Origin: Anolis carolinensis
Lineage: Eukaryota
DNA: 64,000 nt
Direction of reading: 5' to 3'
NCBI RefSeq assembly: GCF_035594765.1
Contig: NC_085845.1
Coordinates: forward strand, 173,616,897 to 173,680,896
In this document: positions 1 through 44,200 of the stretch, in pieces
Position numbering within the stretch: position 1 is the stretch's first letter
Layout: each line of letters starts with the position of its first letter
Program-made: the position numbers and the translations under genes
The notes under the pieces: generated by a model
Database searches by the model: none
Told to the model about the DNA's origin: nothing
The model's input: only the letters and a program-made list of their open reading frames with translations

Positions 1-511
1 TGCTTAGCTGTGAAAATCTACTGGGAGATCTTGGGAAAATCACAATCTGAGAATGTCTCCAAAAAACAAAAACAAGTTGAAGGCATACAATAACCCAATA
101 CAGATTTTGGTTTGTGTGGTTAAAAATATTTTTTTTTCAAAATAGAGGGTTTATTTTTTGCAAAAACACAGAAAATGTGTTTGCCCCCAAGATTTTTGTT
201 TGTTTTGGGGGAAGTCAGGCTTTTAAGAGCAACTAGTTTAAAGCAAAAGTCACCACTCTGGTGATTCAAACATAGGTCCTTCCCCAGAAAACATCCTGGT
301 ACAAGGAGACATTAGGGTGATTATGTTGGAATCTAGGGGCCATAATATAGGCCTCTGGCCACCTTAGTTCTAGAGAAGGCATGGATGTGGCCTCCGTATA
401 GCAGATTTCCACTATGCTATATTATCATAAAGATTAATTTAGTCCTGCAACACTTTGTGTAAGAGAACACCAAGAAAAAACTTTTTCTACCTTGACTACC
501 TCATTTCTCAC

Positions 512-908
512 CTGCGCTCAAGTCCAAAGATGCGTTCCACCTCTGCTCGGCCAGGACTTTGGGTGCGGGAGCTGCTGCGGTCTTTCTCAAATGCCTGCCG
601 ATGGTTGAGTCGCTTTGTCTTAGGCACGTCTGCCAACACCGTGTACTCCTGCCTCATCAGTCCATGCCGACTCTCGTGGCTGCCACTTGTCCTCCAGCTC
701 ATGTCTGAGTCTACTGAGCTAACAGAGGAAGCGGGCCACCCACCTGTTGCCTTGGCATTGCCATGGACAAGTAAGGTACTACGTCCTGCAGGGGATGGCG
801 ATGAGGCCCGGGTTGGGTCAGACTTCTGACGCTCCAGAGAGAAATAGCTGCTGTCTGCTTGACGCTTCCTCCTACTGTCCCCATCGTCTTGGCTCGTCGT
901 TCTGCATT
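512..908 (-). CDS. TRIOBP: TRIOBP coding exon 5 (397 nt; ...DSSYFSLERQ...RASSP...EYTVLADVP...SPGRAEVERIFGLER)
   Basis: Acceptor ttctctccctcacag|AA, donor CGCAG|gtgaga; conserved TRIOBP/MPRIP motifs; lies inside ORF 508..1143. Confidence 0.92.
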
Positions 909-3068
909 CTGTGAGGGAGAGAAATAAGATTCCTCTCATGCTCAAAGGATGGGAATGTTTAGGGAGGGAACGGAGCAAACAAATAGCCAAGATAGTATGC
1001 CAAGTGGGTGTGGGTAGCCCTTCTCTTAGCATAGTTGTGTCTATGTCAGAACTGGGCACAATGGCAGCACCAGGGGAAAAGGAATCAAGGGAAACTATAG
1101 AAGGGGCAAAATGCATCCTGTAGTGGTGGCAAACTGCAGTCATTTTTTAAAAAATGAATAGGAAGATGAAAAGATTGCTCAGGGCCTATCCCTGATTACA
1201 ATACATGAATGCAATTTGTATATGTGAAAAGAAATGTGGGGAGGCAGTGACTCGTTTTGGGGCATATTCCTGCTTCAGGCAGAACTTCTCTTGAGCTCAT
1301 TGGTCAGCATGGAAGCCTCTGAAGTATGCGGATGGACAACTCAGAGTCGTTGATTTTGGTGTGGTTTCATCACTAACATTGGTTAGTAACTGGTGTGTAA
1401 ATCATTGCAGCTCTATAGCCAATTTTTAAAAAATACTTACATTTACCTCATCTCACCTGGAATACTCTCCAGATGTGTTGGGCTACAACTCCCATCAGTT
1501 TCAAGCAAGACAAATCATATCGCCCAGGTTTTTTTCCGTGTCAAAAGCAACTTGAGAAACTGCTAGTTGCTTCAGGTGTGAGAGAATTGGTTGTCTGCAA
1601 AGATGTTGCCTGGGGGACGCCTGGATGTTTTATGTTTTATCATCCTTGTGGGAGGTTTCTTTCATGTCCCCACATGAGGAGCGGGAGCTGACAGAGAGAG
1701 CTCACCCACTCTCCCCGGATTTGAACCGCCGACCTGTCTGTTTGCAGTCCTACTGGCACAAGGGTTTAACCCACTGCGCCACCAGGGCCTCCATAAAGCC
1801 TAAGGTGATGAAATGGAGAACACAATGCAACAGGAAAGCATCAATTTAGGGAGGGTGATGCTCCAGGGAATGCCAGAAAAACAATTTTGACCTGCAGATG
1901 TGTTGAAGCCAAAGGAAAACTCATACAAACGGATGGTTAGAGGGAGACAGTTGGCTTGAGCAATTGCAGGGTTCTTCCATTGCTGCCAACAGCCTGTTTG
2001 CAACTTTTGCACCACTCTTGTTAGTTTTTCAGGACAAAATGTACCTCTTGAGTTGAGAGGCTTTGTTGTGAAAGTAGAGAATCTTTGCATAAAAAGTTTG
2101 ACATGCCAATCCAAGGCCGCGTCTGCATTCCATTCTCCCAAGAGATCATTATACCAGGGTCAGAATCAGAGGGTGGAAAACGTTATGTTCTGGACAATGC
2201 CATCCAGAATCTTCCAGCCAGGATGGCCACTGGCCATGTTATCTCAGGGGTTCTGCATTAGAATTCAGCCAAGTAACTTTATCAAGCTATGAGGCCAAAT
2301 CTAATTACTAGATCTGAAATTTTCACATTTCCAGAACCTTAGCTTCCATTTCAAGAAAAGTTTTTGTTCTTGTCTTCATGGCCAGATAGTCAGTGTTTGG
2401 AAAAACCTTAGAAATCAAAAGCTGGGCTTCCACTGTAGCTTTTGCTGTTCCCCAAACCGCAGGGTTTCCCCCACCCCCTTCTACATCTTATTCTGCACTC
2501 TTCAATTTCATTCCCATTCATCTCTGCACCTTAAATCTATCTAAAATGAGGATTAAAAAAAAATCTAAATCAGGGATAAAAACAAGTTTTTGGAGAACAA
2601 CTCCCATCAGACCTTACCACGATGGTCAATGCTCACAGTTGATTGGGTTGTAGTCCATAACAACCTGAAAGGACGCATTCCCTACCACTGATCTAAATGG
2701 TGGAAGTAGAATTAATCAATGTAAATAAACACAAACAAATGTATGCTTATTTCATCTGGGTACTGGATTTGAGTTCCTTGCATGTAAGTGAGAGTTTTTT
2801 TCCTGAGGAATCAAAACTTCTACAGAGTATTTTCTTTGGTCTGTAGATCAGAGCTTTCCAAACATTGTATGATGGTAGCACACTTTTTAGACATGCATCA
2901 TTTTGTGACACAGTAATTCAGTTTTACTATAGTAATATGTTTTAATATGTATCTTTTATAGAAATACATTTAACATGTTTATTTATAGATTTTTAAAAAA
3001 ATGTTTATGTGTTTTAACTATGCTATAACTCACTCTGAGCCATGATGAGAGGTGGGTAAGAAATAAAC

Positions 3069-3120
<52 letters not shown>

Positions 3121-6100
3121 TGCTACTACTACTACTACTGGCAAACCAAAGATTAAATGAACTCCTTATAAGAGATATGAACACATATATAAATTGCAAT
3201 AATGAAATGTATGGAGACACAATCAATCTAATGAGAATCTTTCATTTATATACATTTAAAATATACGAGTTATTTTGCTATTGCTATGTAATGAGTGAGA
3301 ACCAGAAAGGTATACTCTCTGGAGAGTAGTATTCAAATCCCCACCTGACCATCAAAACTAACTGGATGAATTTGAGCAAGTGCCCTCTTCTCAACCTTAG
3401 AGAAGGGCAAAGTTATTGATTATTTCACATAGACACAGAGAGTTCTTGTAGCATTCCTATGCACACTAACATGTTGCAACATAGTTTGGAAAGTTCTGCT
3501 CTGTGGCTGCACCACCTTTTATATGTGAAACTGAAAGCTTGTTTTGATTTTTGGAAAAAAATAACTTTAGTGGAAGAATGAAGAATTTCCTGGTGAAATA
3601 AGATGGACACTTTTGTTTTAAAGAAGGATAATCTATATGACCACAGGAGGAATAATTCTTTTGTGTGTCTAAAAACAAAACAAAACATTTGGGCTAGAAA
3701 AATGGGGCTAGGACAGAGATACAGCTATAGGAGACAGCAAAATTAGGACATTGGCTCCTGATAAGACACACACCCCCACGAAACTTTCCTTTTCCCTTCA
3801 AATTACTGCAGTAACTTCACCCAAACCTTTAGAAATGCAGTTTAGGCATCCAAAGCAAAGGGGAAGCAAAGTTACCAATGGAAAATAAGCAGCAATACAG
3901 GAGGTCTAGATGAGAACAATGTTTAGTGTCTCACTATGATATGCTAACAATTTGGACACTCTAAAAAAACTCATTTGAGGAGCAGATTTCTTGTTTGTGA
4001 GGATACTACACCTCTTCATTGTTATATCCCAGAGGTGGGGCTCTGGGGGTCACAAAACAACATTGTGGGGTATATGTAGCCTACAGATTACATTGTTACA
4101 CACACATGCACTTCATGATATCTAGATAAAGATAAAGCAGACAGTGCTAGGACTGAGAGCATGTACCTGTTTTCGGACGGCTCTTGGATTCTGTTCTGCC
4201 AGATGGTGCTGCCTCAGCCCATCTAGGTCTATCAGAGGGAAGGCTTTCAGGTTGTACTGCTTGCTTCTGGCCTGCATAGTACATCATGTCTCCTTTGTCA
4301 GATCCCAAAATGCTGTTGAGGAGTCTGGTCATTTCCCAGTCCTAAGGTGGAAAAAAGTTTGAAACATTTTGGCTCTTTCAAAAAACTGCCTGTTCAAGGG
4401 ACTCAATACACATAATTTTAACAATGTACAGAAAAATGAGACTTACACAACATTCCCTTACAAAAAAATAATTCCACTAAAAACAAACCATAGAACTCTT
4501 AAATAAATGGCAACTCCCAGTCCTTGAATTAGAAGCAGACACAAGGAGATGTATTTAATCCACTGACCTTATAACGTGTCAACAAAAAGATGACAATACA
4601 AAAAATTAAAGAGCGACATAATCATATCTATTCATTATATCACTGTTATCCTCAAGTACTTTCCTTCGTATGGCATTCCTAAATTGAACCTATGACAGGG
4701 CCTTTTTGGCAAGATAGGTTCAATGGTGTTCTACCTTTGCCCTTCTCTAAGGTTGACAAGAGGGAAACTTGCTCAAGTTCATCCAGTTAGTTGTGATGGT
4801 CAAGCGAGGATTTGAACACTACTCTCCAGAGAATATACCTTTCTGGTTCTCACTCATTACATAGCCATAGCAAAATTATTTATAGAAAAGTCACAGAGTA
4901 AGTTGTCTATTAAAGTGTTGAAGCTGTATGAACTTCACTAGAAAGGCAGAACTCCATAGTTTGGAAGCCATCTGTGAAAAGGATTCACTTCTCTATGGAT
5001 ATTGCTAGCAGGCTTAAGAGCAGCATCTACAGAGTACATCTTAATAAGCAGGCAGGTTTGTATAGATGTTGTTGACAGAGCCTTTGAGCATACTGGTCGC
5101 AAACCATTCTGGACACTACTGGCTCAAATCAGCACTTTGAACTGGGACCAGAGATACACTGACAGCAGCTACAGTAGATGCAAGCTTGATGACATATTTT
5201 CTATTCTCTGTGTCCACAGCAACATAGATCAGCAGAAGTTCCCAAGATGACCTTAGAAGGAGCCTCATGCAAAGCATATTACAGTAACCTGAACTTGAAA
5301 CATGACTAGTAGTGCAAAATCTGATGTTTCCAGAAAGGTAACATACTAATCTATGATGGCAAAACAGAAGTCTTTGTCCAAAAAGAACCGTCAAACTATG
5401 AACATGGGTTCCTTGGATGAGGCTGCACTTCTTCCTATTTTCAACCAATGTGACTTTGTTTCAGTTTGTTTACCGGCTTCTAACTCCAAGCCATCTCTAC
5501 TCCAAACAGTGTATAGGGATTTCTATGGCTTCTCTTGGACTTAGAAATGAAAATGAGGTCTAGAGTTGGATGCCATCCACATACTGGTAATGCAACAGCT
5601 CAAAATCTCCCGATTTTATTTAAATGAGAAAATTTTGGCACCCGAACACTATGGACTATAAAAAGCCCTGCAATCATCAGCAAAAGACTGTTGAAGTTGC
5701 AGTCCAAAACATCAGGAAGGCTAAAGATTCCCTATATAATATAGACATTAAGTAGCATGAAGTCAGAATCTTGCAATGTGATCGACCCCTCCCCCAAGGA
5801 CTTTGTAAAAGATAGTTCAAAAATCAAGGCTTTATGTCCTATATTTCATATATTTATAGTAGAAGGTAACTGAGATATCTTACTGGAGTTTACTGTGATT
5901 TACTAAAATCCCGGCACATTTTCAAACCTGCAACCGGAAGGCATTGAGTCTCCCTATTTCAGAGGAGAACCCCTAAATTTTGGCTCGATAACAGCATCAT
6001 CTCATTTACCAAAGAGTGGAGTCAAGCCTTCTAACACCAATCCATAAACAACTCACAGTCTATAAAAGTACCATGATCTAAGGCCACTGAGAGGTCAAAA

Positions 6101-9100
6101 ACAAACAATGGAGCTCTTTTAGCAAGTTACCCAAAAAACTACTTCATGGGATATCTAGGTGGCTCCACCTGCTGGCAGGAAAAACTTGTTAACTGCACAA
6201 TATACTTAACTCATAGAGAGAAACAGCCCTCTCTTAAATAATTAAAGATCTTTGTCTCAGTACATGACTTGACTCAACTCTCCACCTTGCAATTATAATT
6301 GTATTGCTTTGCAACTGGTCACCAAAAGGTAAACACTTTGGGTGGCAATATCTCGTAATCTTAGATCACCAACAATCATAGATCAGATGTCAAATGGCTC
6401 TTTAAAATGAGTTTAAAGGTTGACTTTGCAGAAGTGCCCTACAGCAGGCATTTAAGGAAGCTCAGAAAAATTACAGCTTTATTTATTTAAAAAAGAAGGG
6501 TGCAAGTTTCAGGTTAACAAATACCAGTAATATGCATACAAACACACTTCCATCTCACCGTGGGAAGCGTGTCATTGGTGTCTGTCTCAATGCCAAGAAG
6601 TGTGTTGGCATCAGGACAAGGACTGGCTTCTTCAGTTTCGTCTTCAACTTTGCAGCTAAGCTGAGTGTACTCCAAACTTTCCTGCCAGCTGTGGGCAGGT
6701 AAGACATACATGATTAACAACCAACCCAAATTTCAAATACAGAGCACTACTGTAAGTGATATGCTTATGGTAGGATAAAGGCTCACATTAAGACAGTCAA
6801 CAGCAGTGACAACAACATGTAACTTTAAACCAGTATGGGAACTATGCAGACAATAGGTTGTTGTGGTCCTGAACCTCTCCTTTAATCTGGAAAATGGGTG
6901 AGGATCTGAAAAAGAGAATATCACCTCCAGAAACCTCCAGGATTTGTGATTCTGCATTGCAATGCTATCTGCCTACCTCAAAAAATATGTGGCTTACTGG
7001 TAAAATTCTGGTGGCAAAATAATTCACCTCCAATGCCCAACTTACCAAATTTTCCCATCTTTAAATTATTATAGCATCACTTATGGTGAGCAACAAAACA
7101 ATCTCAGCCTTTGGGTGAATCCATCATAGAGCTATATGAACAATGGATGGAAGAAACAGAACCAACAACCTCTTTGTCCAGTCCTGTCGACCAAAGTAGC
7201 CTTCAAAAAATGTGAATTTATTTTGCTTTTTAAGAGCTGAGAACAAACCCTACTTCATTAAATCCTCCAAAAGTCCTATAAGGTATGTCAGTATTTACAG
7301 GGACATGTTACAGAAATCTTGTTGGTACTAATCAAGTAGTGTTTGATTAATACACAGACAGAAAACTGCCTGGATCCAGATGCAGATCCAGTCAGTACAT
7401 AAATAACGCGATGTGTGTGCCATATCTGAGGACTTCCAAGGTGGTTGTAACTCCAAATAAACACTATACTTTTTAAAACAGCCAGTCCTCCACATGTGCT
7501 GGGTGCAGGGACACAGGGTACCCATGGGCATGGAAACTTTGTAAATGAAAATGCTTTTTTTTTTTCAAATCTGAGATATCATCATCTAGGACTCTTTAGG
7601 TTCTTCAGAGCAAGGAAATTAAACAGAGTAGTACTGGAAAGCTTTAGGGATGCCTGGAGAGACCATTTTAATCAAATCTGTGAATAATCAAATCAGCAAA
7701 AGTTAAACTTGTAAATGGGGAGAGCCAACTACATACTTTATAGTCATTGAAAACTGCTGCACAGTTTTATGAACAAATACACTTTGTAAATAAATGGCAA
7801 TAAACTATGAATTTTAACCTTATATTTTATTAGTATTTGTGTCAGTCGTTGTTCTGTGTATTTTAATTTATGCATTTTAATAGTACTATATATTATATCT
7901 GTGTGTTTTAACCACGTTGTACCCCATCTTGAGCCATGGGTAACAAATATTGAGGAGGAGGAGTACCATAACTTTTAACCACTTAATTTAAAACATTGTT
8001 AATAGACAAAAATGCTATCCCTGATAAAACTGAAATATTTACAAGCATTGTTCTTTTTGTAAATGTTAAGTATTCTAGAAACTCCTCTTGTGCAAGGATT
8101 TCTCCCTTCCCTCGAGAGTAGCTATATGTCCTGCTTACAGAAGGTAGTCCTCTATTTGAAAAGCTGCTCAATCCAAACTCAGTTTAAAAGGAAAGAATCA
8201 TAAACTTAGGTTTTAAAAAATCCTGGTTTACTCATGAATTTTAACCAGTTAACCAAATCCCCATGAGTGTCCATTGAAGTTTATCTGTCTTGAGTGTCCA
8301 CGGAAGTTTATCGATGGAGCCTGGTTTCTAAATTATTTTGTGTTATGAAACTACTCTTCATGATTTGCTAAAAAAAAGTTTCACACCCCCCCCCCCAATG
8401 TTTTTCCTGTCTATGGCCCTGCCTGCTCATCATTTTTCTTGCTATGACAAGATGCATTTCATTTTACATATAGACATAAAATCAGTGTATGCAAATTTTA
8501 TGCAGTTCTGCACTCTCCTTTACTCTCTTTTTGTTTATGTATGTGTTTCCTCTTTTGTGGCAATGCATAAGCATCCTCCTCCTCCCTACACCTAAACACT
8601 GAAGATCTGTTGTGGGATATATATAGGCAGCAATATAAATATGAATGTACAACTTGAAGGAATGACTCTGTGAAACCATTCACTTGGGAATATGCAAGAT
8701 CTAATTCAATAATCACTTTAAAACTCATTTCATACTTCTTTAACAAGGTGCCGCCCTAGCAAACAGTACTATCCATGTATTACAATAGGATTATTAATTT
8801 ATGAGACATTTATTCCAGCCTTCGTTCAAATTGCTCAAGGAGCCATGCACAGGTCACCCTTTCCCTCTTCCTATTTTATCCTTAACAATAAACCTGTAAG
8901 GTAAACTAAACTGAGAATGACCCAATGAGCAGAGTGAGGACCAGAAAATGGATTTCATTAACATCTTATTGGATGATGGGAATTGTAGTCCACATATCTA
9001 AAGTGAGGGCCTCAGCAAAAGTGGCATTTAAATCTCACATGTAGATCACTCCCACCATTTTGCTAGGAGCCCCAGTGCTGCAATGGGTTAAACCCTTGTG

Positions 9101-12100
9101 CTGATCTGAAGGTTGCTGGTTTGAATCCAACCCGGGGAGAATGTGGATGAGCTCCCTCTGTCAGCTCCAGCTCCATGCAGGGACATGAGAGAAATCTCCC
9201 ACAAGGATGGTAAAACATCAAACATCCAGGCATCCCCTGGGCAACATCCTTGCAAACGGCCAATTCTCTCACACCAGAAGCGACTTGCAGTTTCTCAAGT
9301 CGCTCCTGACATGAAAAACAAAACATTTTTCTATGTACCTTCTTGATCATTCATAAAGCAGGGGCTATCCACCCCTAAATGGCTTTTATTCCTTTGTATA
9401 ATGCCCTGGGAACATTATTTTATCAAATGAATAAATATAATCTGTTGTCTTCCTCCAGACTCACCAGCAGAGCACTTACCTCTCAGTTTTGTCCTCGGAG
9501 CCCACGCAGACGTAGAGCTCACACTGGGGCACCAAAATGCACAGTGGGTCCCATGGGTCACAGGCACTGGACTCCTTGCTATCCACAGCAAAGTCAGATG
9601 TTTTCACGGCTTTTTCCTTCACTTCCTATCGGAAGAAAAGATGGTCCATTATCACCCTACCATTTGTTTTGCAGAACTCAAGAGGCAAACTTGAGGAAAA
9701 GGCGAGTATCAACTGTGGCTGCATTCTCCTTAGATACTTTTTCATTCTGGTTCATGAAGAGTTCAGTGCAAACTTAAAGCTTGCATATTAAGTAACACAA
9801 TTTACAAAGATGCCGCCTTCCCTATTATAAACGTCTTGTTTAGGAAAGCAGTAAGTGTCACTTCTTTTCATTGTTATTCTGCTCCTCCGCCTGGCGCAGC
9901 AACAATATTAATTTCTCTCTGGATGTTACATAATCCACCATCTTCAAAACATTTATGGGTATATATTCAAGTAATACATCATGTCATTGGTGGTGGCCCC
10001 TTGACTAGACAAGTATAGTACAGTACCAATCTGTCCCATCAGTAGTTTCAAGATAACTGGTTTGCCAGTTTAAACAACTTTTGAGTTACAATCTTCATCA
10101 TTACAAAGGGTTACATATATTTCACAGGTTCATGATCCTATTTGTGCTAGTAAAGTGAATGTTATAATTTTGTTCTTTTTATATCACCATTGTTTTTAAT
10201 TTGTGTTATTAACTTTGAGAACACTTTGTGCCTTCAAATTATTTATGACTTATGTCAACCGTGATGCGAACTTGTCATGGGATGATTTACAGAATCATAG
10301 TCCAACACTACACCACAGTGGCTCTCAAAAAGCAAACTTTGATGTTGTGTGCCTTCAAGTTTATGGTGACTCTAAAGCAATGGTTTCCAACCTTTGGGCC
10401 TCGAGGTGTTTTGGACTTCAGCTCCCACAGTTCCTAATAGCTGGTAAGCTGGCTGGGATTTTGGGAGTTGAAGTCCAAAGGTTAGGAACCACTGCTCTAA
10501 AACAACCATATAATTGGTTTTCTGGGGCTGAAAGTGTGCGACTCACCCAAGGTCACCCAATGAGTTTCCATGGCTGAGCAGGGAATCAAATCCTGATTTT
10601 CAGGGTCTACATGTTCCTATATATAGATATAGATATAGATATAGATATATATTCCCTTCTGTATATGGCAAAAAATTGCCTGGAAGACTCTTTCCTATCT
10701 GAAAGTCACCTAGGCAGCATCAAATTTGGGAGTGGTGTCGAAAATCCCTTCAAACCTCATAGATATTGCCAGCGCTAGCATCTTGGAGTGTGGCATCCTG
10801 AACAATTCAACATTCCACAAAAGTTGATATTCGCAGCATTCTATGAACATCAATTTCTTCCTTTGTACCATTTACGCACTTCATTTAACAATATAGTCCA
10901 AACTTGAAGAAGTCTGAACCAAAACATTGGGAAAACAAAAATAGAAATAATATGTCCTACCAATTGATCTCCTATCTAGCAATCGATAGCACATGCTGCA
11001 CATGGCCTTCTGCACTGGACTAATGCAACTATCTTGACCCTTGCACCTTGACAGCCAGGCTAGGTCATGCAACAGAAAGAGACTGCATACTGTGTTTGCT
11101 GATCATCTCCGTCTCTTCAAGGGACCCCGTCTTGCTCTACAACAATTCCCAACATATAACGGCTTGTTTATTTCCTCCAACATTACAAGGTCTCCTGAAG
11201 GATGAAAGCTAAACAAAGACAATCCAAACCACTGAGCCATATCACAAAACTAGAGTATCAGACTTTATCTTCACCAGACACAGGTCTTTTGTAGAGTCTG
11301 TGGCTCTTAACTGGCTATAGAAAACTAATGCATCCCAAAATATTTTGTATAACAAGGATAACTTGCAACAGGATGCTCTGTGTGTGACTAGGTGTTTTCA
11401 AATTATTTTTAGACTTATGGAGACTACATGAACATCATACTCAGAGGCGGTGTTGCCAGTCCCTTCCTCTGAAATGTAGCATACAAGACCGGCATTTCTG
11501 GGCAGTTTCCCATCTATGTAATAACCGGGACTGGGCCTGCTCAGCTTCCAAGATTTGATAGGATCTGGTACCTTTAGGCCCAGTCAATAGGAAGAACTTT
11601 ATGAGATTTAGAGCTTTTTGATTGGGGAATATGCTGCTTCAGTGTGTGATAGAATCCCCTTCTCTGGATGTTTGTAAGCAGAGGCTAGAAGGCCATCTGT
11701 TGGGAATGCTCTGACTATATTTTCCTGCCTGTCAGGGAATTGGACTGGATGACCCTTGTGGTCTCTTCCAACTCCATTATTTGGTATATCTATCTGTGGA
11801 CTGCCTGGGGCAGAGCTGGAAAATGACACCATAACCTGAGCAACTCAATAAATCCCTTATTTTTGACCCTGCAAATCCCATGTGTACTACAACAACAGAG
11901 ACTCCTCTTCCAGTTCTGTAAGTGCATGGGTACTGTTTTCCTCAAACTGCTCTCCTTCAGGTGTTTTGGACTTCAGCTCCCAGAAATCCCAGCCAGCTTA
12001 CCAGTTGTTAGGCATTGTGGGAGCTGACGTCCAAAACATCTGGAGCAGAGTTTGTGAACCACTGGGTTAAAGTATCTCCACACACCAGAACCAACAATAG

Positions 12101-15100
12101 CATGAGGAAAGCAGTTTGGAGTTGTAAAGCCAAATGACAGAATGGGAAGCACTGCCTGCATTGGAAAAGGGAGCTAACAAGAGTCAAATCAAAAGCAAAT
12201 GAAATAGACCAGAAGCTTCTCTATCCTGGTCTACCTGCTAAATCTCAACTCTGCCTGTCCCTTTAAGAGCTTCCTCTCATTGCAAGGAGAGTGTGGATAT
12301 ATATCATCCCCCATCCCACCTCCGCCCAGTTACCTTTGCAGGTTATGATCCCGAAAGGGAGGGTCCCTGTCAGCACCTCCACGTCCCCTCCATTGTCCTG
12401 CTCAAGCTCAGGGGGGGAAGGACTCTGAGCAGACAGTAGCCGAGCCAGGAGGAAACTCTAGAGGACCAGGGCTGGGGGGAGGCAGTGGGGGGAGAGAGGG
12501 AACCTCATTACTATTTCATAATCTTAGGCTGATCTGGCCCAGCAATGAACAACACGAAACCCTTTGTGAACAGGATACCAGCTGGCACTGCAGAGGGAGG
12601 GATGGGGCTTACACCTGCCCAGCCAGGGAGAGGTGGGCAAGCCAGGTGCCAACAGGTGACTCACTCCACCCTGACTTTTTCAATCTTAATCTGCATAAAA
12701 GAGAAAGGCTCACGAAAAAGCAAAAAAGACCAGGAGGGGAGGAGCTGCAATGTCAATGAGATCTGTATCCTAAGGGCACATAAACACAGGATAGTATAGA
12801 ACCATAGAAGAGACCCCAAGGGCTATCCAGTCCAACCCCATTCTGCCATGCAGGAAAATATAATCAAAGCACTCCCGATGGGTGTCATTAATAATAATAA
12901 TAACTGGGTGCCGTGCCAAAAGATCTCAGCCGGCATTTGGAAACAATAGACATTGACAAAATCACGATCTGCCAACTGCAAAAGGCCACCCTACTGGGAT
13001 CTGCACGCATCATCCGAAAATACATCACACAGTCCTAGACACTTGGGAAGTGTTCGACTTCTGATTTTGTGATACGAAATCCAGCATATCTATTTTGTTT
13101 GCTGTGTCATAATAAAATAATAATAATAAATTTATTTTTATACCCTGCCACCATTTTCCCAAAGAGACTCAGGGCAGCTTACAAGCAGGACCAGGCCCAG
13201 GACACACAGCAAAGTTCACCAACTAAAAACGTAGTTAAAAATATAACATACAACAGTCCAATAACACAATTAAAGCAGCAAAATATAAAAGCAGCATTAA
13301 AACTGCATAAAGCAAACCTCAACAAACCAGTAACCAGGAATACAATAGACATGGTGAAATAAAATGATCATTCAGCTTCAGCTTAAAAACCTCGAGAGAA
13401 GGCGACCCCACCACACTCCGAGCTGAACAGCTTTAACTCCCCTGTTTGGATATCAGCCAGCACGCCAATGCCTTAAATCAAGAAATAGCTTTCTAAGAGC
13501 TACAGAGATGCTCGCAGGGATACCTCAGCAAGCAAGAGTCGAAAAGTGGTAGGCTAAAACCTGGAACTTGAATCCATGGCTGAGACCAGAAGAGAGATTC
13601 CATCCTGGACGACATGGAAGACAGTGAACAGACTGTGCTCTCGCACCACGAGATGCAGAGTCAACCTTCCGAAATGGTGCTACAAAGTGGAGTCTGTGAC
13701 ATGCGAGTGTGAAGAAAAGCAAACCACAGACCACTTGCTAAATTGCAGCCTGAGCCCTGCCATGTGCACAATGGAGGACCTTCTCACAGCGATACAAGAG
13801 GCACGTCAAGTGGCCAGATTCCGGTCAAAGGACATTTAGTATAATGCCAAGGTTTTTTAACTTTGTGTTTCTAAATACATTACAACTGTACCCTCAGTTT
13901 TGCTACTGATGTGATAAATAAACTGTCAGGAAGGTGGTCTTAAAATTTAGGTGGGATCTCTTTTTCTGCAGCTTGAATCCATTTCTCTGTGTCCAAGTCT
14001 CTAGAGTAGGAAAAACCCAAGCTTGCCCCTTCCTCAGTGTGACATGCTTGCAAATATTTAAACATCATGTCCCCTCTCAGTTTTCCTTCAAGCTAAACAT
14101 ACCCAGCTCCAGAAGCTGTTCCTCAAAAGGCTTGGTTTTCAGAACTTTGATCATTTTGGTTACCCTTCTCTAGGCATGTTCTAGCTTATCAATAGCCTTC
14201 TTGAATCGTGATGCCCTGAACTGGACACAGTACTCCAGGTACTGTGTCTGGTTCTGAACAACGTAGAATAGAGTGATGCTTTCACTTCCCACAGTCAGAT
14301 GCAATAATCCTATTGATTTAATTTAGAATCACGTTGGCTTTTCTAGCTACCACATCACACTGCTGACTCATGTTCCGCTTGTGGTTTACTAAGACTCCTA
14401 AATCTCTTTCACGTGTACAGTTGCCAAGTCAGATGCCACCCATACTATATCTGTGCATTTCATTCTTCTAAGTGTAGTATCTTACACTTAAGTGTAGTAG
14501 CACTAAAGGCACAGTTCCCCACAGCAGCATTCACAAGTTGTGTTTATTTATGTATTTATTGCCCTCCAGCTTCCCATCTAAAAGAACATGAAAAACAACT
14601 AGCAGTAACACAACACAGATTAGAAAAAAACCCTCTTGATTAAAAACACAACATGAAAACAAAACCATTAAAAAAACACAATGGTAAAAGGCAAAACTGG
14701 CACTCAACCAGTTAGAACAGGGTAAACAGCTGGGGCCCTCCAGATGTTTTTGGCCTAATACTCCCGGTTGTCCTAGCCAGTACTGGCAACGATGGAGGAG
14801 GATGGGGAATCTCAATGATCTCACCTCTGAGTTAGACTCCAAAGGTCTGCCTGAACAAAAAATATCTTTTAGCATTGGACTATAATTCTGGAAAACTGAG
14901 TTCAACCAGGCAAATCATACACATTTAGCCTCAGAAAACTCCATGATAGGTTCACCTTAGGGTCACTGTAAGTTGCAAACAGCTTGAAAGTCCACAACAA
15001 GGACAGAAGCTGTGAGAATAAAGATGGAGCCAATCTTGCTTCCTTCAGCAGGGAGTTGCAGAGTCTGGGAGCAACCACTAAAGATGAATCTACACTGTGT

Positions 15101-19991: not shown

Positions 19992-20247
19992 GGAGTGTTC
20001 TGCCTCAGTTATACTTTTCTCTACTTGGAAATACTTACTTGTGCTTCCTGTAGAAACAGTGCCGTGAAACAGGTCGACCCTCATGAAATACTCATAACAG
20101 TGCCACCCACAAGCATATCCAATGTAAGCTCACCTGGTTACCACACTGGTGCGCAGCGACTGTTCGGAAACAGTTCTGGCAGCGGCTCTTGGCAAACACA
20201 TTGGCCTCGAACTTCTCACAAGTAACAGGTTCTGCCATTTCTGACAT
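512..20247 (-). CDS. TRIOBP: TRIOBP (TRIO and F-actin binding protein), long isoform, 5' part; coding exons complement(20134..20247, 9480..9625, 6559..6688, 4167..4341, 512..908); continues beyond the left edge
   Basis: All introns are GT-AG and the phases (0,2,0,1,2) join into one open frame. N-terminus MSEMAEPVTCEKFEANVFAKSRCQNCF resembles recalled human MEEVPGDALCEHFEANILTQNRCQNCF. QEYTVLADVP...SPGRAEVERIFGLERR resembles human EEYTVLADLP...SPGRAEVERLFGQERR. It lies downstream of NOL12 on the same strand, as in human. Confidence 0.92.
1528..1792 (-). mobile_element. tRNA-derived SINE (Anolis SINE2-type, ...TGACACG-polyA tail)
   Basis: Reverse complement of the family seen at 9066, 15140, 23476, 38556, 58735 and 60797; A/B-box-like head. 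Confidence 0.85.
3070..3138. repeat. (TTA)n/(CTA)n microsatellite, tail of a degraded L2-type 3' end
   Basis: Read directly from the sequence. Confidence 0.9.
4167..4341 (-). CDS. TRIOBP: TRIOBP coding exon 4 (175 nt; DWEMTRLLNS...SRPKT)
   Basis: Acceptor ttttttccaccttag|GAC, donor ACAG|gtacat; starts with DW like the human exon; phase 0 to 1 fits both neighbours. Confidence 0.8.
6559..6688 (-). CDS. TRIOBP: TRIOBP coding exon 3 (130 nt; SWQESLEYTQ...DTLPT)
   Basis: Acceptor cctgcccacag|C, donor ACG|gtgaga; phase 2 to 0; open frame. Confidence 0.78.
9066..9320 (+). mobile_element. tRNA-derived SINE (SINE2-type)
   Basis: ggagccccagtg...gggttaaaccc...ctcctgacatgaaaaa. Confidence 0.85.
9480..9625 (-). 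CDS. TRIOBP: TRIOBP coding exon 2 (146 nt; EVKEKAVK...DPLCILVPQCELYVCVGSEDKTE)
   Basis: Acceptor cttttcttccgatag|GAA, consensus donor GAG|gtaagt; phase 0 to 2; open frame. Confidence 0.82.
10378..10494. mobile_element. hAT (Charlie-type) MITE
   Basis: TIRs caatggtttccaacc / ggttaggaaccactg; near-perfect 8-bp TSD ctctaaag/ctctaaaa. Confidence 0.8.
10618..10652. repeat. (ATAGAT)n/(AT)n microsatellite
   Basis: Read directly from the sequence. Confidence 0.85.
11620..11780 (+). mobile_element. CR1 LINE 3' end fragment
   Basis: ...cagaggctagaaggccatctg...ggactggatgaccct...gtctcttccaactc, the complement of the CR1 at 36523. Confidence 0.75.
12904..13130 (+). mobile_element. R4/Dong-clade non-LTR retrotransposon 3' end inserted in (TAA)n
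   Basis: Encodes LGAVPKDLSRHLETIDIDKITICQLQKATLLGSARIIRKYITQS*, a restriction-like-endonuclease-clade C-terminus; TAA repeats on both sides. Confidence 0.75.
13438..13922 (+). mobile_element. Vingi/Ingi-type LINE 3' fragment
   Basis: WKTVNRLCSRTTRCRVNLPKWCYKVESVTCECEEKQTTDHLLNC (C-terminal zinc knuckle); same family as 44060-45010. Confidence 0.8.
15085..15601. mobile_element. Palindromic Harbinger-type MITE with a SINE2-type SINE (about 15140-15425, +) inserted
   Basis: tctacactgt...acaatgtagatgcac termini; SINE body inside. Confidence 0.75.
18309..18443. mobile_element. hAT MITE
   Basis: TIR cagtggttctt/gggaacaactg; TSD ctctaaag/ctctaaaa. Confidence 0.8.
19325..19990 (+). mobile_element. 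L2 LINE 3' end (ORF2 C-terminus, 3' UTR, (TTA)n tail)
   Basis: LHWLPIIFRAQFKVQVITYKALNGSGPAYL...RAFSAVAPRLWNSLP is the typical L2 C-terminus; frame intact, so probably young. Confidence 0.9.
20134..20247 (-). CDS. TRIOBP: TRIOBP first coding exon (114 coding nt; exon probably starts at acceptor 20324)
   Basis: ATG at 20247 (second in-frame ATG at 20238); CEKFEANVFAKSRCQNCFRTVAAH motif; donor CAG|gtgagc; upstream acceptor cctttcacag at 20325. Confidence 0.9.
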
Positions 20248-38200: not shown

Positions 38201-41200
38201 TTTCAATGGGTTTATGTTGCCCTTGGTCAAAGTACAATTTTGTTAATTTCAGTCTTCATTTGCTCTAAAACCCATTTATTGGTCATTTTGGCAGTACGTA
38301 CACACTTTCCACAGAATTCTCCTTTTGCAACTCATTTCAACAGAATTGTTTTTCCCTGCACTATCAGCTCATTTAACAACCAGACACACATCAGAAATAC
38401 AATGACATGGGCAATCTTGATTTTGGTATTCCATGATATCTCTTTACACTTGAGCATCTTATCTAGTGCCTTCATAACTGCTCTTCCAAATCTGGATTTT
38501 CTTCCAATTTCTTGACTATAATAATTGACTAGTTCATATCGCCATCATCCACTTTTGAGCCCCCGGTGGCGAAATGGGTTAAACCCTTTTGCCAACAGGA
38601 CTGCTGACCAACAGGTCGGCAGTTCAGATCCGGGGCGAGCGGGTGAGCTCTCTCTCTCAGCTCCAGCTCCCATGCAGGGACATGAGGGAAGCCTCCCACA
38701 AGGATGGTAAAATACCAAACATCCGGGCATCCTCTGGGCAACGTCCTTGCAGACAGCCAATTCTCTCAAATCAGAAGCAACTTGCAGTTTCTCAAGTCAC
38801 TCCTGACATGAAAAATAAAAATACATGTATTAGTTTTATATGTTCTTTTACCTGGGGTTATGCATCTAATTTGTCATTGTTCTCCGCTTCGATAATCAGG
38901 AAAAGATGGGTAAGAAATTATTATTGTTATTACTATTATTGTAATTCCTATCATCAATGATCTCCCCCCTCTGACCTGTTTTTTCAATGTTCAACTGCAA
39001 TCCTACGTTGCATTTTCCTCAGCAGCAGTGATCCTAAGTCTTTGTTATTTTCCAACAGTGGTATGGTATGATGTACATATCATAAACTGTTCATGGTCCT
39101 GTTTCCAAATTTCACACCTTCAGGAACAATTTCATCAGGGATACGTTTGCCAGTGGATCAAAAAGAGTAATAAGAAGGCAACCCCTCAACTCACTTCAGC
39201 AATCCCTTCAGAGATCTGACAGGATAATCTGAACTGGTTTTGAGGTAAAAGAAGAGTTCATCATACCTCTGAGACAGCAAAGGTTCTTTAGATTTCTTAG
39301 GCAATGTAGGCTGGTTGGAGGTATCCTCTTTTTCCACGCCACCTTCTTCTCCCTGGAAAAGCCACATGAACCCGGATATTATCATCACTCAGAAGCAAAC
39401 TTTGGCCCTCCAGGTGTTCTGGACTTCAACTCCCACAATTCCTAACAGCTGGTGGGTGATAAAGTCCAAAACACCTCTTTTTGCCCAAAGTTTAACCATG
39501 CCTGGGTTAGAGCCACAAGCACTTCATGACATCACAGCAAAACAAATTTGGTGGAACCGTTTTGTTATCTATGTGAACATTTCCCCAACCTCAACTAAAA
39601 AGTAATTCCTAGTGTAACAGGAATGTTATCTGCAAAGCACATTTCAGTTTCTGTGCTGGGTGTTTCAATTCCTCTGATCAGTGGAACTGCAGATGCAACC
39701 CATGGGTTGAATGGAAGTTGTTCCACAAACTGGAGGGAGATCTAAACCAGGAGTAGGAATCCTGGACTATAAAATGCATCAGCCCTACCCAGAATAGCCA
39801 AGGTGAGGAACGCTGGGATTTACAACCCCAACGATATCTGGAGGACTACAGGACTGCAACCTCAGTTTATGAAGATAACCAAGCTGGCAATTAAAAGCCC
39901 CTAAATACTTTATCTGGACACTACTCCCCTGCGTATACATACTCACAAAAAGGCTACCTTGTGAAAGAGGGGTGAGCCAGTGGAAATTTAGGAGGCCATA
40001 TTAGCCCTTGGCAGAACTTTGAGGGTTGCACCTGCTCCAACAATTAACCAACCAGTTTCTTTAAAAATTGCAAAAACATCTAGGGAATATGGGGTCTTTT
40101 CCAACCTATTCCTGATTGCAAAAAAGACCCCTTCTGAGCCTTATTCAGCCTGGGAAGAGGCATAAAATGTGGAAATGCACGCTCATCCCCTATTGCAGGG
40201 CTTCTTGAATTTTTCCAATCACAACCTCTTTTGGCCCAAGAAATGTTTACATGACCCCAGGTATATAGGTATACAAAATAAATATAGAAATCAAACATTT
40301 ACTGTTAACAAATCAGCATTTGCAAGGCTTGCTGTACAGGATGATTTTCCCTTTTACAAAGCACAGCTGAAGCATTTTCTGCAGAGATAACTGTAAACAC
40401 TGTACAATAGGTAAGTGTAAATATCTACAAAAGCCACTAGGTGACATTCAGAAACCTTTTACTATTGCCAACTTAATTAATAGTAATAGTAGTAATAATA
40501 ATAATAATTTTTATTTATTTATACCCCGCCATCATCTCCCCAACGCTCTAGGCACTCTCCTCCATATATAAATATATCTCAATTAATCAATACAAAAAGC
40601 AAGTTCCAAAACACTGTAAGAAATGCTAAAAAAAATTAAACTGCAGATTAAAAAGCACTGGCCATCATCCCATTAGAACGGTCTACCTTGAAAGGGTAAT
40701 TAGAACCAGTAGGATAGATGAACACACAGATGTTTGACGTGTAGTAGTCAGGCACTACTGAAATTAAGTTTAAATAAAGAAAACGAAAGGCATATTCTTT
40801 CTTCCGACCATCCACCCATTGCCTTCTACATAATGAATGTTAACTTGCACAATAATCCCTGGATCCCCAGGCATCAAGAAGATTCTGAGATTTGCTAATC
40901 AAGATGATAGCTTTTCCAGACTCTCCACAAGCCAACTGAAAAGCATTACCTTCTCCTCCTGGGCGTCCAGTCCTAGAAGGCGTGCTCCTGAAAGGTCCAG
41001 GTCACTGACTGTAGTAACGGTGACCGTGTGGCCTGGGTGGTCGTAGCTCACAGACTCTGTCCGGGATGTCACCAGATGCTCTAATTCATCAGCTTCCTCT
41101 GAGAATGCAAAAGAAGGAATATGCTGAAATGATACGTATCACAGTAGCTTCTCCAATAAAATGGCTGGGAAAATAGCACTGAAAGAAAACATCTTAAGTT

Positions 41201-44200
41201 TGAACTTTCAGATTTGTTACTTTATATACAGTGTCACCTCTGCACCTGCTGGACTGGCACCTGTGCTTTCAGTTACACATATTTGACAAAATATAGGTAA
41301 TTTATAAATCTTCAGGCAATTCTATAGTATGCTTCTGCCAGAAATTACTTAGGAGTTGCCCCAAAGAGCATAGCAAATTCCTAGGGAGTTCTATCTCTAG
41401 GAATTTTTTAAGTTATCCAAGCTGACTCTATGATAACATCTATGATAATATCAGGCTTTGTTATTGTTGGAGATAGCAATCTTCTCAAGCCTCCTCTATC
41501 TAATGTATTGTCTGTTTATAATGTGTTGTTTATTTCCTGAAGAGTATGTCTTTTTTGTTTTGTAGCTTCCCTAGCTCTATGCACTTGAGGCAGTGGGAGG
41601 GGCTGCAGTTCATGTGACTGGTTCAGTGACAGTTTAGAATGCAGTTTTAAAAAAGGGTGACAGTTGAGGTTTGAGTCTGTTTGAGTACAGAAGTCAGTGT
41701 TAGAAGTTAGAAGTCAGCTGTGGCTTGAGTTCCTTGGAAGTAGACTGTTATTAAAGACAACTGTACAGAGCAATATAGTTTTTAAGAGACTGTTAAAGAC
41801 TATAAGTTAAAGATACAAACTGAAATGTTTTAAAGTTTAACCTGACAAGAAATGTATCTGTATATTTAAATACATTAAGTTGTGAATAAAAGAAATGTTA
41901 TTTTAAAGAAGTCTACTTGAATCTTTGTCTGCTGAGAGCATCGAATAGAAACCAGATATTTATGCGCCCAGTGATCTTTCATTACACAATAAACTCAAGG
42001 AACACTCCTGAAACTTTGCTACACAATAGGCTTACGATCCTAACAATTCATAATTCCCTATATGTTATAATCCTAACAGGTCATAATCCAATAGTCCAAT
42101 AGTTCTTACCCAGACTTTCCTATTTCCACACTATTCCAAGAATGTATCCCCACAGACACAGGGGATGTACTGCATTGCTTCTTCCGATATCATACAACAC
42201 ATAATTGGGATAGAAATCCATCAACTAGTATTGCAGTTAGATGGTCCTTATTGAGATTCTAGGGCAAAGCTTTCCATACTGTGTGTTGTGAGACATTAGT
42301 GTATTGGCTGCAGCATATAGGTGCACAAACATGAGAAACTTGTGAGTCTAAGTGAAATAAGCATTAAACCACATATTTTAATATATAAATGAAGATTTTC
42401 ATGAGATATGTTGTGTCCCCATACATTTTATTATTGCAATTTATGTATGCCTCTGTTTCTCTTATATGAATTTGGTTTTAACCTCTGGTTTGCTAGTAAA
42501 ACTGAATTACTGTGTTGTGAAATTATGTGTGTCTAAAAAGCGTGTCACCAACATGAAATGCTTGGAAAGCTCTGTTCTAGGGAATCTAATACCTACCACA
42601 ATCCTTCTGCCTTTCATTGAGTCTGTAGAAGACATTATAGACAAATGTCCTTCAAATGTTGAGCGGACATAATTTGGATTTTATATGTCAGTGCCGAAGA
42701 GGCCTGAGGGGATCCCACACAATTGCTCACTATCTAAAAGTATCAAAATTCATGGCTAAAAAACAAACAGTAACATATAATTAGTAAGCACCTAGAAGCA
42801 ACATTGGAAGCCTATCTTTTTCACAACTGCTTCATTGCCCAGACCTAAGCAACTTTCCTGTGATCCGGTCTCACTCAGAGAAAAAATCCCCAACTCTTGC
42901 ACAGGACAGAAAATGAAATGCTGTCCATACTTCAAGCATGCTCATTTCAAGTCTTCTGCTCCCTTCTTTCTCCAACCCTTCACAATGGTTATACCTTTAG
43001 AAAGGACACTCACCTAAGGCATCTTCTCTTTCCTTCAACATTTTCATGTATTCCTTATGTCTCTAAAAGGCAAGCAAAATAAACAAAATTCCAGTATAAT
43101 AGAATGTTTTTCAAATAATTAACTGTTTGCATGTTCTTGTGTAAGAGTTGGGACACTGGCAGTTTGGGCTACTGGGGCACACAATGTAGGCAACCACATC
43201 GGGAAATATGGCCGAATGAACCTAGTGGTGTTTACTTTGGGATAAGCATGCATGGGATGAGGAAACATTTCTATAACTGGAAAAAGAAGTAAAATAATAG
43301 GAAAGGTGATCAAGAACAGTGAACAAGTGCAAGTCTGCATCCTCTTAGCTACAATAGGTATATGAGGAGAAGTCAACAGAAAAATGTCTAGAATTAAGCC
43401 TAATTAATACCGTGGGGTTTAAACAAGGCATGGGCAAACTTTGGCTCTCCGGGAGTTTTGGACCAACTCCCACAATTCCTAACAGCCTACTGGTTGTCAG
43501 GAATTATGGGAGTTGAAGTCCAAAACACCCACAGGGCCAAAGTTTGCCTGTGTCTGGATTAGACGATATGCCGCATTTGGTATCACAAGAATGGAAATCA
43601 CAAGGCTCTCCGGATGCTATCCTTGAATGTTAAGGTTTAAAGAATGATGGGAGTTGCAGTCCATTATCATGTAAAGGTGCTGGGTTTGAAGCCATGTGGT
43701 GTTTTCGTCTGCAAGTCATCCCTCGCCTAATTTCTTCCATCTGTCACGCCAACTGCAGAACCCCTTCTCTCAAGTAGACCACCCCCAAAGAGAGCGGTAC
43801 CTCTTCCTTCATTTTCTTCTGTTCTTCCTTCAGCTTGCGCCTGATCTCCTCCATGGCTATTTTCCTCCTCTCAACCTTACGTTTGTGGAAGCCGGTCAGG
43901 TACTCACTGGGAAGAGGAAAAAGATTGCAGTAAGTTAGAGACACAGGAAGAAAGGCAGTCTTTCTTCTTCAACGCACTTCCATGCACATGGGAAGAAAAA
44001 GGTAAAGCATTTGCCTGCATAAACATCCCATAGCTTATTTTGTCATGTTAAAACAATTATTTATCTTATTTATTTATCCTGCCAGAAGCTAATTAAGAAT
44101 ACAGTTATAATGTATAGAAAAACCACAAAGTTAAAAACTTGGCATTGTACTAAATTTCCTTTGACCAGAGGCTGGCCACTTGAGTGCCTTTGGTGTTGCT

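What the first reader, a model, noticed from the sequence alone, without database searches (positions are those of the whole stretch)
512..908. TRIOBP rootlet exon is short and repeat-free: a single RASSP unit
Seen: a 397-nt exon running from YFSLER to SPGRAEVERIFGLER, with exactly one RASSP motif and no tandem repeats. Recalled: in human these landmarks bound one exon of about 3.3 kb containing the R1/R2 repeats (many PRASSP units). Those repeats let TRIOBP-4/5 bundle actin in stereocilia rootlets, and mutations there cause DFNB28 deafness. Inference: the lizard keeps the pre-expansion state, and the mammalian bundling domain grew by expansion of this seed motif within the exon.
Basis: partly seen in the sequence, partly recalled or inferred. 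Interest (0 to 1): 0.7.

Follow-up and report, generated by a model that had tools for sequence, protein, structure and literature searches.

The report
Lizard TRIOBP exon without bundling repeats
In the green anole, the TRIOBP exon that in mammals carries the long actin-bundling repeats needed for hearing is a short, repeat-free 397-base exon; every other non-mammalian vertebrate I could check has the same short form, so the repeats look like a mammalian addition.

Summary
Window 512-908 (minus strand) is a real, spliced 397-nt exon of Anolis carolinensis TRIOBP. It equals residues 190-320 of RefSeq isoform X1. It has one RASSP and no tandem repeat. RNA contigs from three studies show both junctions, and a DNA run shows even depth, so the assembly is not collapsed.

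The acceptor, donor and reading phase match the bison exon to the nucleotide. The bison exon is 1969 nt and repeat-rich.

The spacing between the YFSLER and EYTVLAD landmarks is:
- 59-77 residues in all squamates, turtles, crocodilians, birds, amphibians, lungfish and cartilaginous fish recovered. This includes the alligator lizard, the classic rootlet species.
- 577-982 residues in marsupials and eutherians.

The paralogue MPRIP aligns across the same segment without a long insertion. The short form is therefore ancestral and the R1/R2 array is a derived within-exon expansion, at least therian in age. No monotreme sequence was recovered.

The "seed motif" idea is plausible but not proven. A single [DE]-P-x-[RW]-A-S-S-P-P-R site sits at a conserved position (RASSPPR in Pogona) and matches the mammalian repeat core.

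No paper I could search describes this.

The parts
512..908 (-). TRIOBP long-isoform coding exon, 397 nt. It is the orthologue of the mammalian R1/R2 repeat exon (human exon 7, formerly exon 6) and encodes residues 190-320 of Anolis TRIOBP isoform X1.
   Evidence: Translation. 100% match to P0001. Spliced on both sides in RNA contigs of 3 studies. Same boundaries and phase as the bison exon.
909..910 (-). Splice acceptor AG, preceded by a pyrimidine tract.
   Evidence: Joint 908->4167 with skipped ends CT..AC (GT..AG on the minus strand) in X1, X5 and X11.
510..511 (-). Splice donor GT (CAG|GTGAGA). Read-through would give ...ERR then a stop at 510-508.
   Evidence: The loose end at 511 reads into the next exon (KSETLEAFQA). 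The same AG|GTGAG donor is seen in seal and bison.
829..846 (-). 5' landmark YFSLER, part of the conserved block ESGYFSLERRKS.
   Evidence: Alignments. F, S and K are invariant in 23 species.
796..810 (-). The single RASSP motif (CGG GCC TCA TCG CCA). It sits at the conserved [DE]-P-x-[RW]-x-S-S-P site, 7 residues after YFSLER.
   Evidence: alignments, matrix scan.
628..648 (-). Landmark EYTVLAD, part of the conserved block RQEYTVLADxPKxKR.
   Evidence: Y, L, A, D, P, K and R are invariant.
514..558 (-). 3' landmark SPGRAEVERIFGLER. It is invariant as S-P-G-R-x-E-V-x-R-x-F-G and is predicted to form a short helix that continues into the next exon.
   Evidence: AlphaFold model (helices at P0001 309-320 and 323-333, pLDDT about 65-74).
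4167..4362 (-). Upstream TRIOBP coding exon (about residues 124-189).
   Evidence: tblastn of P0001. RNA contigs lie on 4167-4343 and join to 908. The upper boundary is approximate.
6559..6690 (-). TRIOBP coding exon (about residues 87-130). Boundaries are approximate.
   Evidence: tblastn, 100% identity.
9434..9658 (-). TRIOBP coding exon (about residues 39-88). Boundaries are approximate.
   Evidence: tblastn.
20134..20247 (-). First coding exon of the long TRIOBP isoform: ATG at 20247, 38 codons carrying the CEKFEAN...CQNCF motif, donor after 20134.
40962..43905 (-). NOL12 exons, seen at 43905-43837 and 41096-40962, upstream on the same strand. This is the conserved NOL12-TRIOBP neighbourhood.
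   Evidence: tblastn with a turtle NOL12-TRIOBP fused model, P0107, 87% identity. Fused NOL12+TRIOBP models occur in several sauropsids.

Best explanation
Window 512-908 (minus strand) is the green anole's orthologue of the mammalian TRIOBP exon that carries the R1 and R2 actin-binding repeats, in its ancestral, unexpanded form. It encodes a 131-residue, mostly disordered, mildly basic linker (pI 10.2, net charge +7) of the long, TRIOBP-5-type isoform. The linker holds four conserved short blocks: ESGYFSLERRKS; one [DE]-P-x-R-A-S-S-P site; RQEYTVLADxPKxKR; and SPGRAEVERIFGxER, which runs into a predicted helix in the next exon. In the lineage leading to marsupials and eutherians, 500-900 extra codons of RD-x-P-R-A-S-S-P-x-R-type units were added between the first and third blocks of the same exon. 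The splice sites and phase did not change. Lizard TRIOBP therefore has no R1/R2 module. Inferred, not shown: in lizards, birds and other non-mammals, TRIOBP contributes to stereocilia rootlets through its conserved parts. These are the C-terminal coiled coils that oligomerise and bind F-actin, the basic disordered central region (pI 9.8, net +28), and the blocks it shares with the N-terminal F-actin-binding half of MPRIP. Other bundling proteins may also take part. Also inferred: the mammalian array most likely arose by duplication of the single ancestral RASSPPR-type site. I put that at about 0.55.
For: Identity and splicing. A 5433-nt RNA contig in X11 carries the exon between its neighbours and has room for the full 1436-aa reading frame.

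Exon orthology to the nucleotide: bison L002 14263-16231 is one 1969-nt exon with 2 nt plus 20 codons before YFSLER and a GAG CGC AG|GTGAG donor, exactly as in Anolis. Weddell seal shows the same donor.

Distribution: the landmark spacing is 59-77 aa in all non-mammals recovered and 577-982 aa, with 7-30 RxSSP, in therians. MPRIP proteins align over 94% of the segment.

Flanks retained in therians: opossum aligns to Anolis on both sides of the insertion.

No repeats in Anolis. No Ser/Pro/Arg-rich open frame elsewhere on the minus strand between 908 and 20134.

Seed site: alignments; matrix scan (rank 1 in Anolis, Podarcis, Mauremys, Cuculus and Protopterus); RASSPPR in Pogona equals the R2 core.

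Literature: R1 and R2 lie in one exon and are the actin-binding parts (PMC9544205, PMC7663296). Alligator lizards have actin rootlets (PMC6981779), and Elgaria TRIOBP (P0099) has the short exon. MPRIP binds F-actin through its N-terminal part (PMC8068864).
Against: No monotreme protein was recovered, so 'mammalian' is shown only for therians. The tissue of the RNA runs is not known. An ear-specific alternative exon outside the window is not formally excluded, although the whole RefSeq protein has a single RxSSP. Most non-mammalian proteins are automatic gene models. Teleost TRIOBP was not resolved. Polypterus shows that this segment can expand independently, so expansion is not unique to mammals. 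The seed inference rests on a short low-complexity motif. In 7 of 12 species the site is not the top match to the mammalian unit. No actin-binding data exist for any non-mammalian TRIOBP.
Confidence: 0.85

Rival explanations
1. The mammalian repeats arose within this exon from some other stretch, for example by slippage in the Ser-rich middle of the segment. On this reading the likeness to the lizard RASSP site is a coincidence of composition. The lizard exon is still the ancestral short form, but it is not the 'seed'.
For: The site is not the best match to the mammalian unit in Elgaria, python, alligator, axolotl, caecilian, Mobula or Paroedura. The exact RASSP is not general across species. 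In therians the native site is degenerate (DPTQTSQS) and the repeats begin about 40 residues downstream of it. Polypterus expanded the same segment with a different unit.
Against: The site is the top match in the whole protein (>1200 positions) in 5 of 12 species, above the 95th percentile of shuffles in three. Pogona carries RASSPPR, a 7-residue identity with the R2 core, at exactly this site. R1 and R2 share one core, which points to a single founder unit.
Confidence: 0.35
2. Secondary loss: the vertebrate ancestor had a repeat-rich exon, and sauropsids, including the anole, lost the repeats.
For: Polypterus has a 390-residue segment with repeats.
Against: Axolotl, Pleurodeles, caecilian, lungfish, manta ray and catshark all have 69-77 residues between the landmarks. 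MPRIP, the outgroup, aligns across the segment without a long insertion. The Polypterus units (SSLHRNIETG type) are unlike R1/R2. This reading would need many independent precise losses.
Confidence: 0.03
3. Artefact: the repeats exist in the anole but were collapsed in the assembly, or lie in an unannotated exon or isoform.
For: Tandem repeats are often collapsed in older assemblies. The tissue of the RNA runs is unknown.
Against: RNA contigs of three studies carry exactly this exon between its neighbours. A DNA run has even depth of 27-40 across 1-1400 and an identical contig over 1-1579. More than 40 independent sauropsid assemblies give a spacing of 59-68 aa. No Ser/Pro/Arg-rich open frame lies in the TRIOBP introns of the window. 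P0001 has one RxSSP in 1436 residues.
Confidence: 0.03

Closest known systems
Mammalian TRIOBP-4/TRIOBP-5 repeat exon (human exon 7, formerly exon 6; mouse exon 6)
   Same: It is the same gene, lying next to NOL12. The acceptor position, phase and AG|GTGAG donor are the same (bison, seal). The flanking blocks GYFSLER, EEYTVLADLP and SPGRAEVERxFGxERR are the same. The downstream PH and coiled-coil part is the same.
   Different: The mammalian exon is about 2-3 kb, with 577-982 residues between the landmarks. It carries the basic R1 array (pI about 11.5-11.9) and the R2 units VCIGHRDAPRASSPPR. The anole exon is 397 nt, with 66 residues between the landmarks and one RASSP.
MPRIP (p116Rip / M-RIP), the vertebrate paralogue of TRIOBP
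   Same: It shares the CxKFQANxF...CQNCF start. A short segment with GYFSLE(K/R), DYTxLAD and SPGRxEVERxFG lies at about residues 245-380, inside the N-terminal part reported to bind F-actin (PMC8068864). Like lizard TRIOBP, it has no R1/R2.
   Different: It is a different gene with two PH domains. Identity to the anole segment is only 33-39%. It has a different function, targeting myosin phosphatase.
Polypterus senegalus TRIOBP-like protein (XP_039623524.1, named SRRM2-like)
   Same: It has the same N-terminus and the same two landmarks. The segment between them is expanded to about 390 residues by tandem units.
   Different: The units are SSLHRNIETG-type plus two RSSSPRRG, not R1/R2, so this is an independent expansion.
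Gecko TRIOBP (Paroedura, Sphaerodactylus, Heteronotia; 1784-2014 aa)
   Same: It has the same short, repeat-free exon, with 66 residues between the landmarks.
   Different: A tandem repeat of about 37 residues (about 14 copies in Paroedura) has grown in a downstream central exon. That region has only about three SPGR units in the anole.

Membership tests
TRIOBP orthologue (long, TRIOBP-5-type isoform) | Sequence identity with an annotated TRIOBP product of the same species | tested here: met
   The exon peptide is 100% identical to residues 190-320 of Anolis carolinensis TRIOBP isoform X1, XP_008108902.1. Five exons of P0001 map to the window.
TRIOBP orthologue (long, TRIOBP-5-type isoform) | Exon boundaries and phase shared with the mammalian repeat exon | tested here: met
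   In both bison L002 14263-16231 and the Anolis exon, 2 nt plus 20 codons precede YFSLER and the donor is GAG CGC AG|GTGAG. Seal has the same donor.
TRIOBP orthologue (long, TRIOBP-5-type isoform) | Conserved neighbourhood: NOL12 directly upstream on the same strand | tested here: met
   NOL12 exons lie at 43905-43837 and 41096-40962 on the minus strand. That human has this order is recalled, not tested.
TRIOBP orthologue (long, TRIOBP-5-type isoform) | C-terminal PH domain and coiled coils in the same product | tested here: met
   P0001 carries PF00169, and its residues 860-1436 show the PH and coiled-coil sequence. These exons lie left of the window. A 5433-nt RNA contig links the exon to about 4.2 kb of downstream transcript.
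TRIOBP-4/-5 actin-bundling module (R1/R2) | R1: tandem basic units of about 24 residues ([24 protein letters not shown] type, pI about 11.7; PMC7663296) | tested here: not met
   No tandem repeat was found. There is one RxSSP in the whole protein. The segment between the landmarks is 66 residues with net charge +3.
TRIOBP-4/-5 actin-bundling module (R1/R2) | R2: about five VCIGHRDAPRASSPPR units, 30-40 residues apart | tested here: not met
   No such unit occurs in P0001. Therians have 3-4 RASSPPR.
TRIOBP-4/-5 actin-bundling module (R1/R2) | Binds and bundles F-actin in vitro and localises to stereocilia rootlets | not testable with these tools
   This needs co-sedimentation and bundling assays and immunolocalisation in the lizard ear.
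TRIOBP-4-type short isoform | A transcript that ends just after this exon, giving a protein without PH and coiled coils | tested here: inconclusive
   Read-through of the donor gives ERR then a stop at 510-508. Any consensus GTRAG donor in this phase does the same. The three RNA runs show no depth at 201-400, in the intron just downstream of the exon.
TRIOBP/MPRIP shared N-terminal segment | Blocks GYFSLE[RK], [DE]Y[TS]xLADxPK and SPGRxEVERxFG, in this order, within about 130 residues | tested here: met
   Alignments show 21 invariant positions in 23 species. MPRIP proteins cover 94% of the query at 33-35% identity.

The most novel reading that the evidence does not exclude
The R1/R2 actin-bundling array of TRIOBP, whose loss abolishes rootlets and causes DFNB28 deafness, is an innovation of the mammalian (at least therian) lineage. 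It was built inside one exon from a single ancestral RASSPPR-type site. All other vertebrates, including lizards and birds with well-formed rootlets, make rootlets with a TRIOBP that lacks the array. Rootlet bundling in non-mammals would then rest on a different mechanism, and the mammalian array would be an added reinforcement, possibly tied to the mechanical demands of the mammalian cochlea.
Probability: 0.5. Interest if true: 0.7.

Novelty: new variant of a known kind. Interest (0 to 1): 0.55.

Why it matters
TRIOBP-4/-5 are taken to form stereocilia rootlets through R1 and R2. Almost all deafness alleles truncate that exon, and the published conservation analysis I found covers mammals only (PMC7663296). 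If the array is absent from every non-mammal, including the alligator lizard in which rootlets were first dissected, two questions become testable. What bundles rootlet actin outside mammals? What did the array add in mammals? The anole exon is also a natural 'minus R1/R2' version with all flanking motifs intact. It could be used in actin assays or for exon replacement in mice. The gene is also a clear case of a functional domain born by repeat expansion within one exon. Independent expansions occurred in the same segment in a bichir and in another exon in geckos.

Tried and rejected
- Pfam gave no family for the exon peptide.
- Paper searches found nothing on non-mammalian TRIOBP, on TRIOBP/MPRIP paralogy, on zebrafish triobp or on positive selection that describes the taxonomic spread of the repeats. 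One of these searches was badly posed and returned unrelated papers.
- Kitajiri 2010 and Mulder 2004 are not held. The mapping of actin binding in MPRIP therefore rests on PMC8068864 and on my recall of Mulder 2003.
- Monotremes appeared neither in the exhaustive profile search, nor in the word search with the anole segment, nor in a search with the opossum N-terminus, which returned marsupials only. I left the third costly protein search unused.
- Opossum DNA is not on record for that isoform. The seal locus starts in a run of N, which I left as it is. Bison gave the complete exon.
- The AlphaFold model is mostly low-confidence, as expected for a disordered segment (mean pLDDT 58). I did not use it for fold searches.
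- The read-through stop is not evidence for a TRIOBP-4-like isoform, because any consensus donor in this phase gives a stop.
- No human DNA or protein was fetched or compared.

Full report
**What is in the window.** The finding lies on the minus strand. Read that way, 908 is preceded by a pyrimidine tract and AG (910-909). Position 512 is followed by GT (511-510) in the context CAG|GTGAGA. The exon is 397 nt: two bases finish a split codon, 131 codons follow, and two bases are left over. The peptide starts CRTTSQ..., reaches YFSLER after 20 codons, has RASSP once (810-796), then EYTVLADVP, and ends SPGRAEVERIFGLER. Tandem Repeats Finder and the repeat finder show no repeat in or near the exon. 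The window has no N. Pfam has no family for the peptide.

**Identity.** An exhaustive phmmer search gave a 100% match to residues 190-320 of a 1436-residue protein. [quoted passage not shown]
- 20247-20134 (start codon, CEKFEAN...CQNCF)
- about 9658-9434
- 6690-6559
- 4362-4168
- 908-512

The remaining exons lie to the left of the window. NOL12 exons lie upstream on the same strand at 43905-43837 and 41096-40962.

**Transcripts and assembly.** Contigs of three runs from three studies (X1, X5, X11) cover only the exons. They join 908 to 4167 across an intron with GT..AG ends on the minus strand. From 511/512 they run on into sequence that reads KSETLEAFQA, the start of the next exon of P0001. 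One contig is 5433 nt, with room for the whole long reading frame. A fourth run (X9) is genomic. Its depth is even at 27-40 over 1-1400, and one contig is identical to 1-1579, so there is no sign of a collapsed repeat. The runs' tissues are not on record. The run kind was itself a guess, and I read three of the runs as RNA from the exon-only coverage and the spliced joint.

**The mammalian counterpart.** I did not use human sequence. In bison (L002) a single uninterrupted exon, 14263-16231 (1969 nt), runs from 2 nt plus 20 codons before YFSLER to ...LFGQER and ends GAG CGC AG|GTGAG. Acceptor position, phase and donor are the same as in the anole, and the length difference is 524 codons. In Weddell seal the repeat exon ends at the same donor. 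Its 5' part lies in a run of N that I left alone. Papers place R1 and R2 in one exon (human exon 7, mouse exon 6) and identify them as the actin-binding parts. R1 is basic with about 24-residue units. R2 has VCIGHRDAPRASSPPR units (PMC9544205, PMC7663296).

**Distribution.** Two searches, with names, gave long TRIOBP models from many clades. The number of residues from YFSLER to EYTVLAD is as follows:

| Group | Spacing (aa) |
|---|---|
| Lizards, amphisbaenian, python, rattlesnakes, geckos | 66-68 |
| Elapid snakes | 60 |
| Turtles | 66 |
| Crocodilians | 66 |
| Birds | 59-64 |
| Axolotl, Pleurodeles, caecilian | 74-77 |
| Lungfish | 74 |
| Manta ray, catshark | 69-76 |
| Marsupials (15-25 RxSSP, 3-4 RASSPPR) | 748-878 |
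| Eutherians | 577-982 |

The lizards include Anolis, Sceloporus, Pogona, Podarcis, Elgaria, Varanus and Lerista. In passerines and some other birds my landmark pattern failed, but the alignment covers the segment. MPRIP, the paralogue, aligns over 94% of the segment at 33-35% identity. Opossum aligns to the anole on both sides of its insertion: DSRRKRQADSSYFSLERQKSDPTRASS against ESRAKSRGESSYFCLERNKLDPTQTSQ, and SRHGLMRQEYTVLAD against GRHNLEREEYTMLAD. The short form is therefore ancestral. The array is an insertion or expansion inside the exon that predates the marsupial-eutherian split. No monotreme was found.

**The seed motif.** At the anole's RASSP the other species read as follows:
- Pogona: SEPSRASSPPR
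- Podarcis: SEPSRAPSPPR
- Turtles: SDPTWVSSPPR
- Birds: TDPPWASTPPR
- Crocodile: SEPSQPASPPR
- Axolotl and lungfish: SESDRSSSP and SEPDRSSSP

I built a position matrix from 101 RxSSP units of eight mammals (consensus QRDAPRASSPPRTT) and scanned whole non-mammalian proteins with it. This site was the best hit in Anolis, Podarcis, Mauremys, Cuculus and Protopterus. It exceeded the 95th percentile of shuffled proteins in three of them. It ranked 3 to 86 in seven others. These species share the site by descent, so this is closer to one observation than to five. R1 and R2 share the same core, which fits a single founder. I rate the seed idea at about 0.55. The rival view, an origin from another part of the segment, I rate at about 0.35.

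**How it probably works.** The exon peptide is mildly basic (pI 10.2, net +7) against +34 to +37 for R1. It is predicted disordered, except for short helices at the 3' block that continue into the next exon, with pLDDT about 65-74. Shown: the anole makes a long TRIOBP mRNA with this exon and without any R1/R2. Inferred: actin association of this protein comes from three parts. The first is the coiled-coil part shared with TRIOBP-1, which binds F-actin and oligomerises (PMC7663296). The second is the basic central region (residues 321-860, pI 9.8, net +28). The third, possibly, is the set of blocks shared with the N-terminal F-actin-binding part of MPRIP (PMC8068864; the homologous MPRIP stretch lies at about 245-380). 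Alligator lizards have actin rootlets (PMC6981779), and Elgaria TRIOBP has the same short exon. Rootlets therefore do not require R1/R2 in that animal, whatever TRIOBP's share in them is.

**Other expansions.** In Polypterus the same segment is about 390 residues, with SSLHRNIETG-type units and two RSSSPRRG. In geckos a unit of about 37 residues is repeated about 14 times in a downstream exon. These disordered Ser/Arg/Pro-rich parts of TRIOBP are prone to expansion. This makes the mammalian event less singular, but it also supports the proposed mechanism.

**Novelty.** The exon and protein are in RefSeq as automatic models, so the sequence itself is not new. I found no paper in the held library stating that R1/R2 are absent outside mammals or comparing this exon across vertebrates. 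The one conservation analysis I read covers 57 mammalian genera only (PMC7663296). Subscription papers such as Kitajiri 2010 and Bao 2013 could not be read, so prior mention cannot be excluded. The scan's own notes hold nothing on TRIOBP.

**Verdict.** The 'pre-expansion state' reading is supported. The 'seed motif' reading is plausible and unproven. The expansion is dated only to therians.

Noticed in passing
window 62691-63728 (+): An intronless 345-codon open frame encodes a rhodopsin-type receptor. Its best solved relative is the urotensin-2 receptor (E 4e-87), far ahead of galanin and somatostatin receptors. It is probably one of the extra UTS2R-family genes kept by non-mammals.
   Followed up: partly
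window 50048-50338 and 57606-57899 (+): These are exons of a gene with an ArfGAP domain (E 5e-16) and a PH domain, the ADAP/centaurin-alpha type. It lies between NOL12 and the receptor gene. I do not recall this order from the human TRIOBP region.
   Followed up: no
P0003 (Paroedura picta TRIOBP) residues about 600-1150; also P0102, P0103, P0104: Gecko TRIOBP is 350-580 residues longer than in other lizards. A unit of about 37 residues (RSISPERS...SPQRYTGD type) is tandemly repeated about 14 times in a central exon downstream of the one studied. One gecko model is even named filaggrin-2-like.
   Followed up: partly
P0026 (Polypterus senegalus, named SRRM2-like) residues 166-556: This is an independent expansion of the same inter-landmark segment to about 390 residues. 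It uses units of about 11 residues (SSLHRNIETG type) and a duplicated RSSSPRRG.
   Followed up: partly
window 508-511 (-); L001 2378-2384; L002 16230-16236: Read-through of the exon's donor gives Arg then TGA in anole, seal and bison, as needed for a TRIOBP-4-type end. Any consensus donor in this phase does the same, and the anole RNA contigs show no read-through.
   Followed up: partly
window 1401-1800, 2801-3000, 5600-6000: These intron pieces have depths hundreds to thousands of times above their surroundings in both DNA and RNA contigs, and many loose ends. They are interspersed repeats, not exons.
   Followed up: no
window 34513-34631: A perfect tandem duplication of a 58-nt unit (2.1 copies, 100% match) lies in the stretch between TRIOBP and NOL12.
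   Followed up: no
P0107, P0138, P0139, P0155 (turtle and bird models): Several automatic gene models fuse NOL12 (PF09805) to TRIOBP. This reflects their close tandem arrangement and is probably an annotation error.
   Followed up: no
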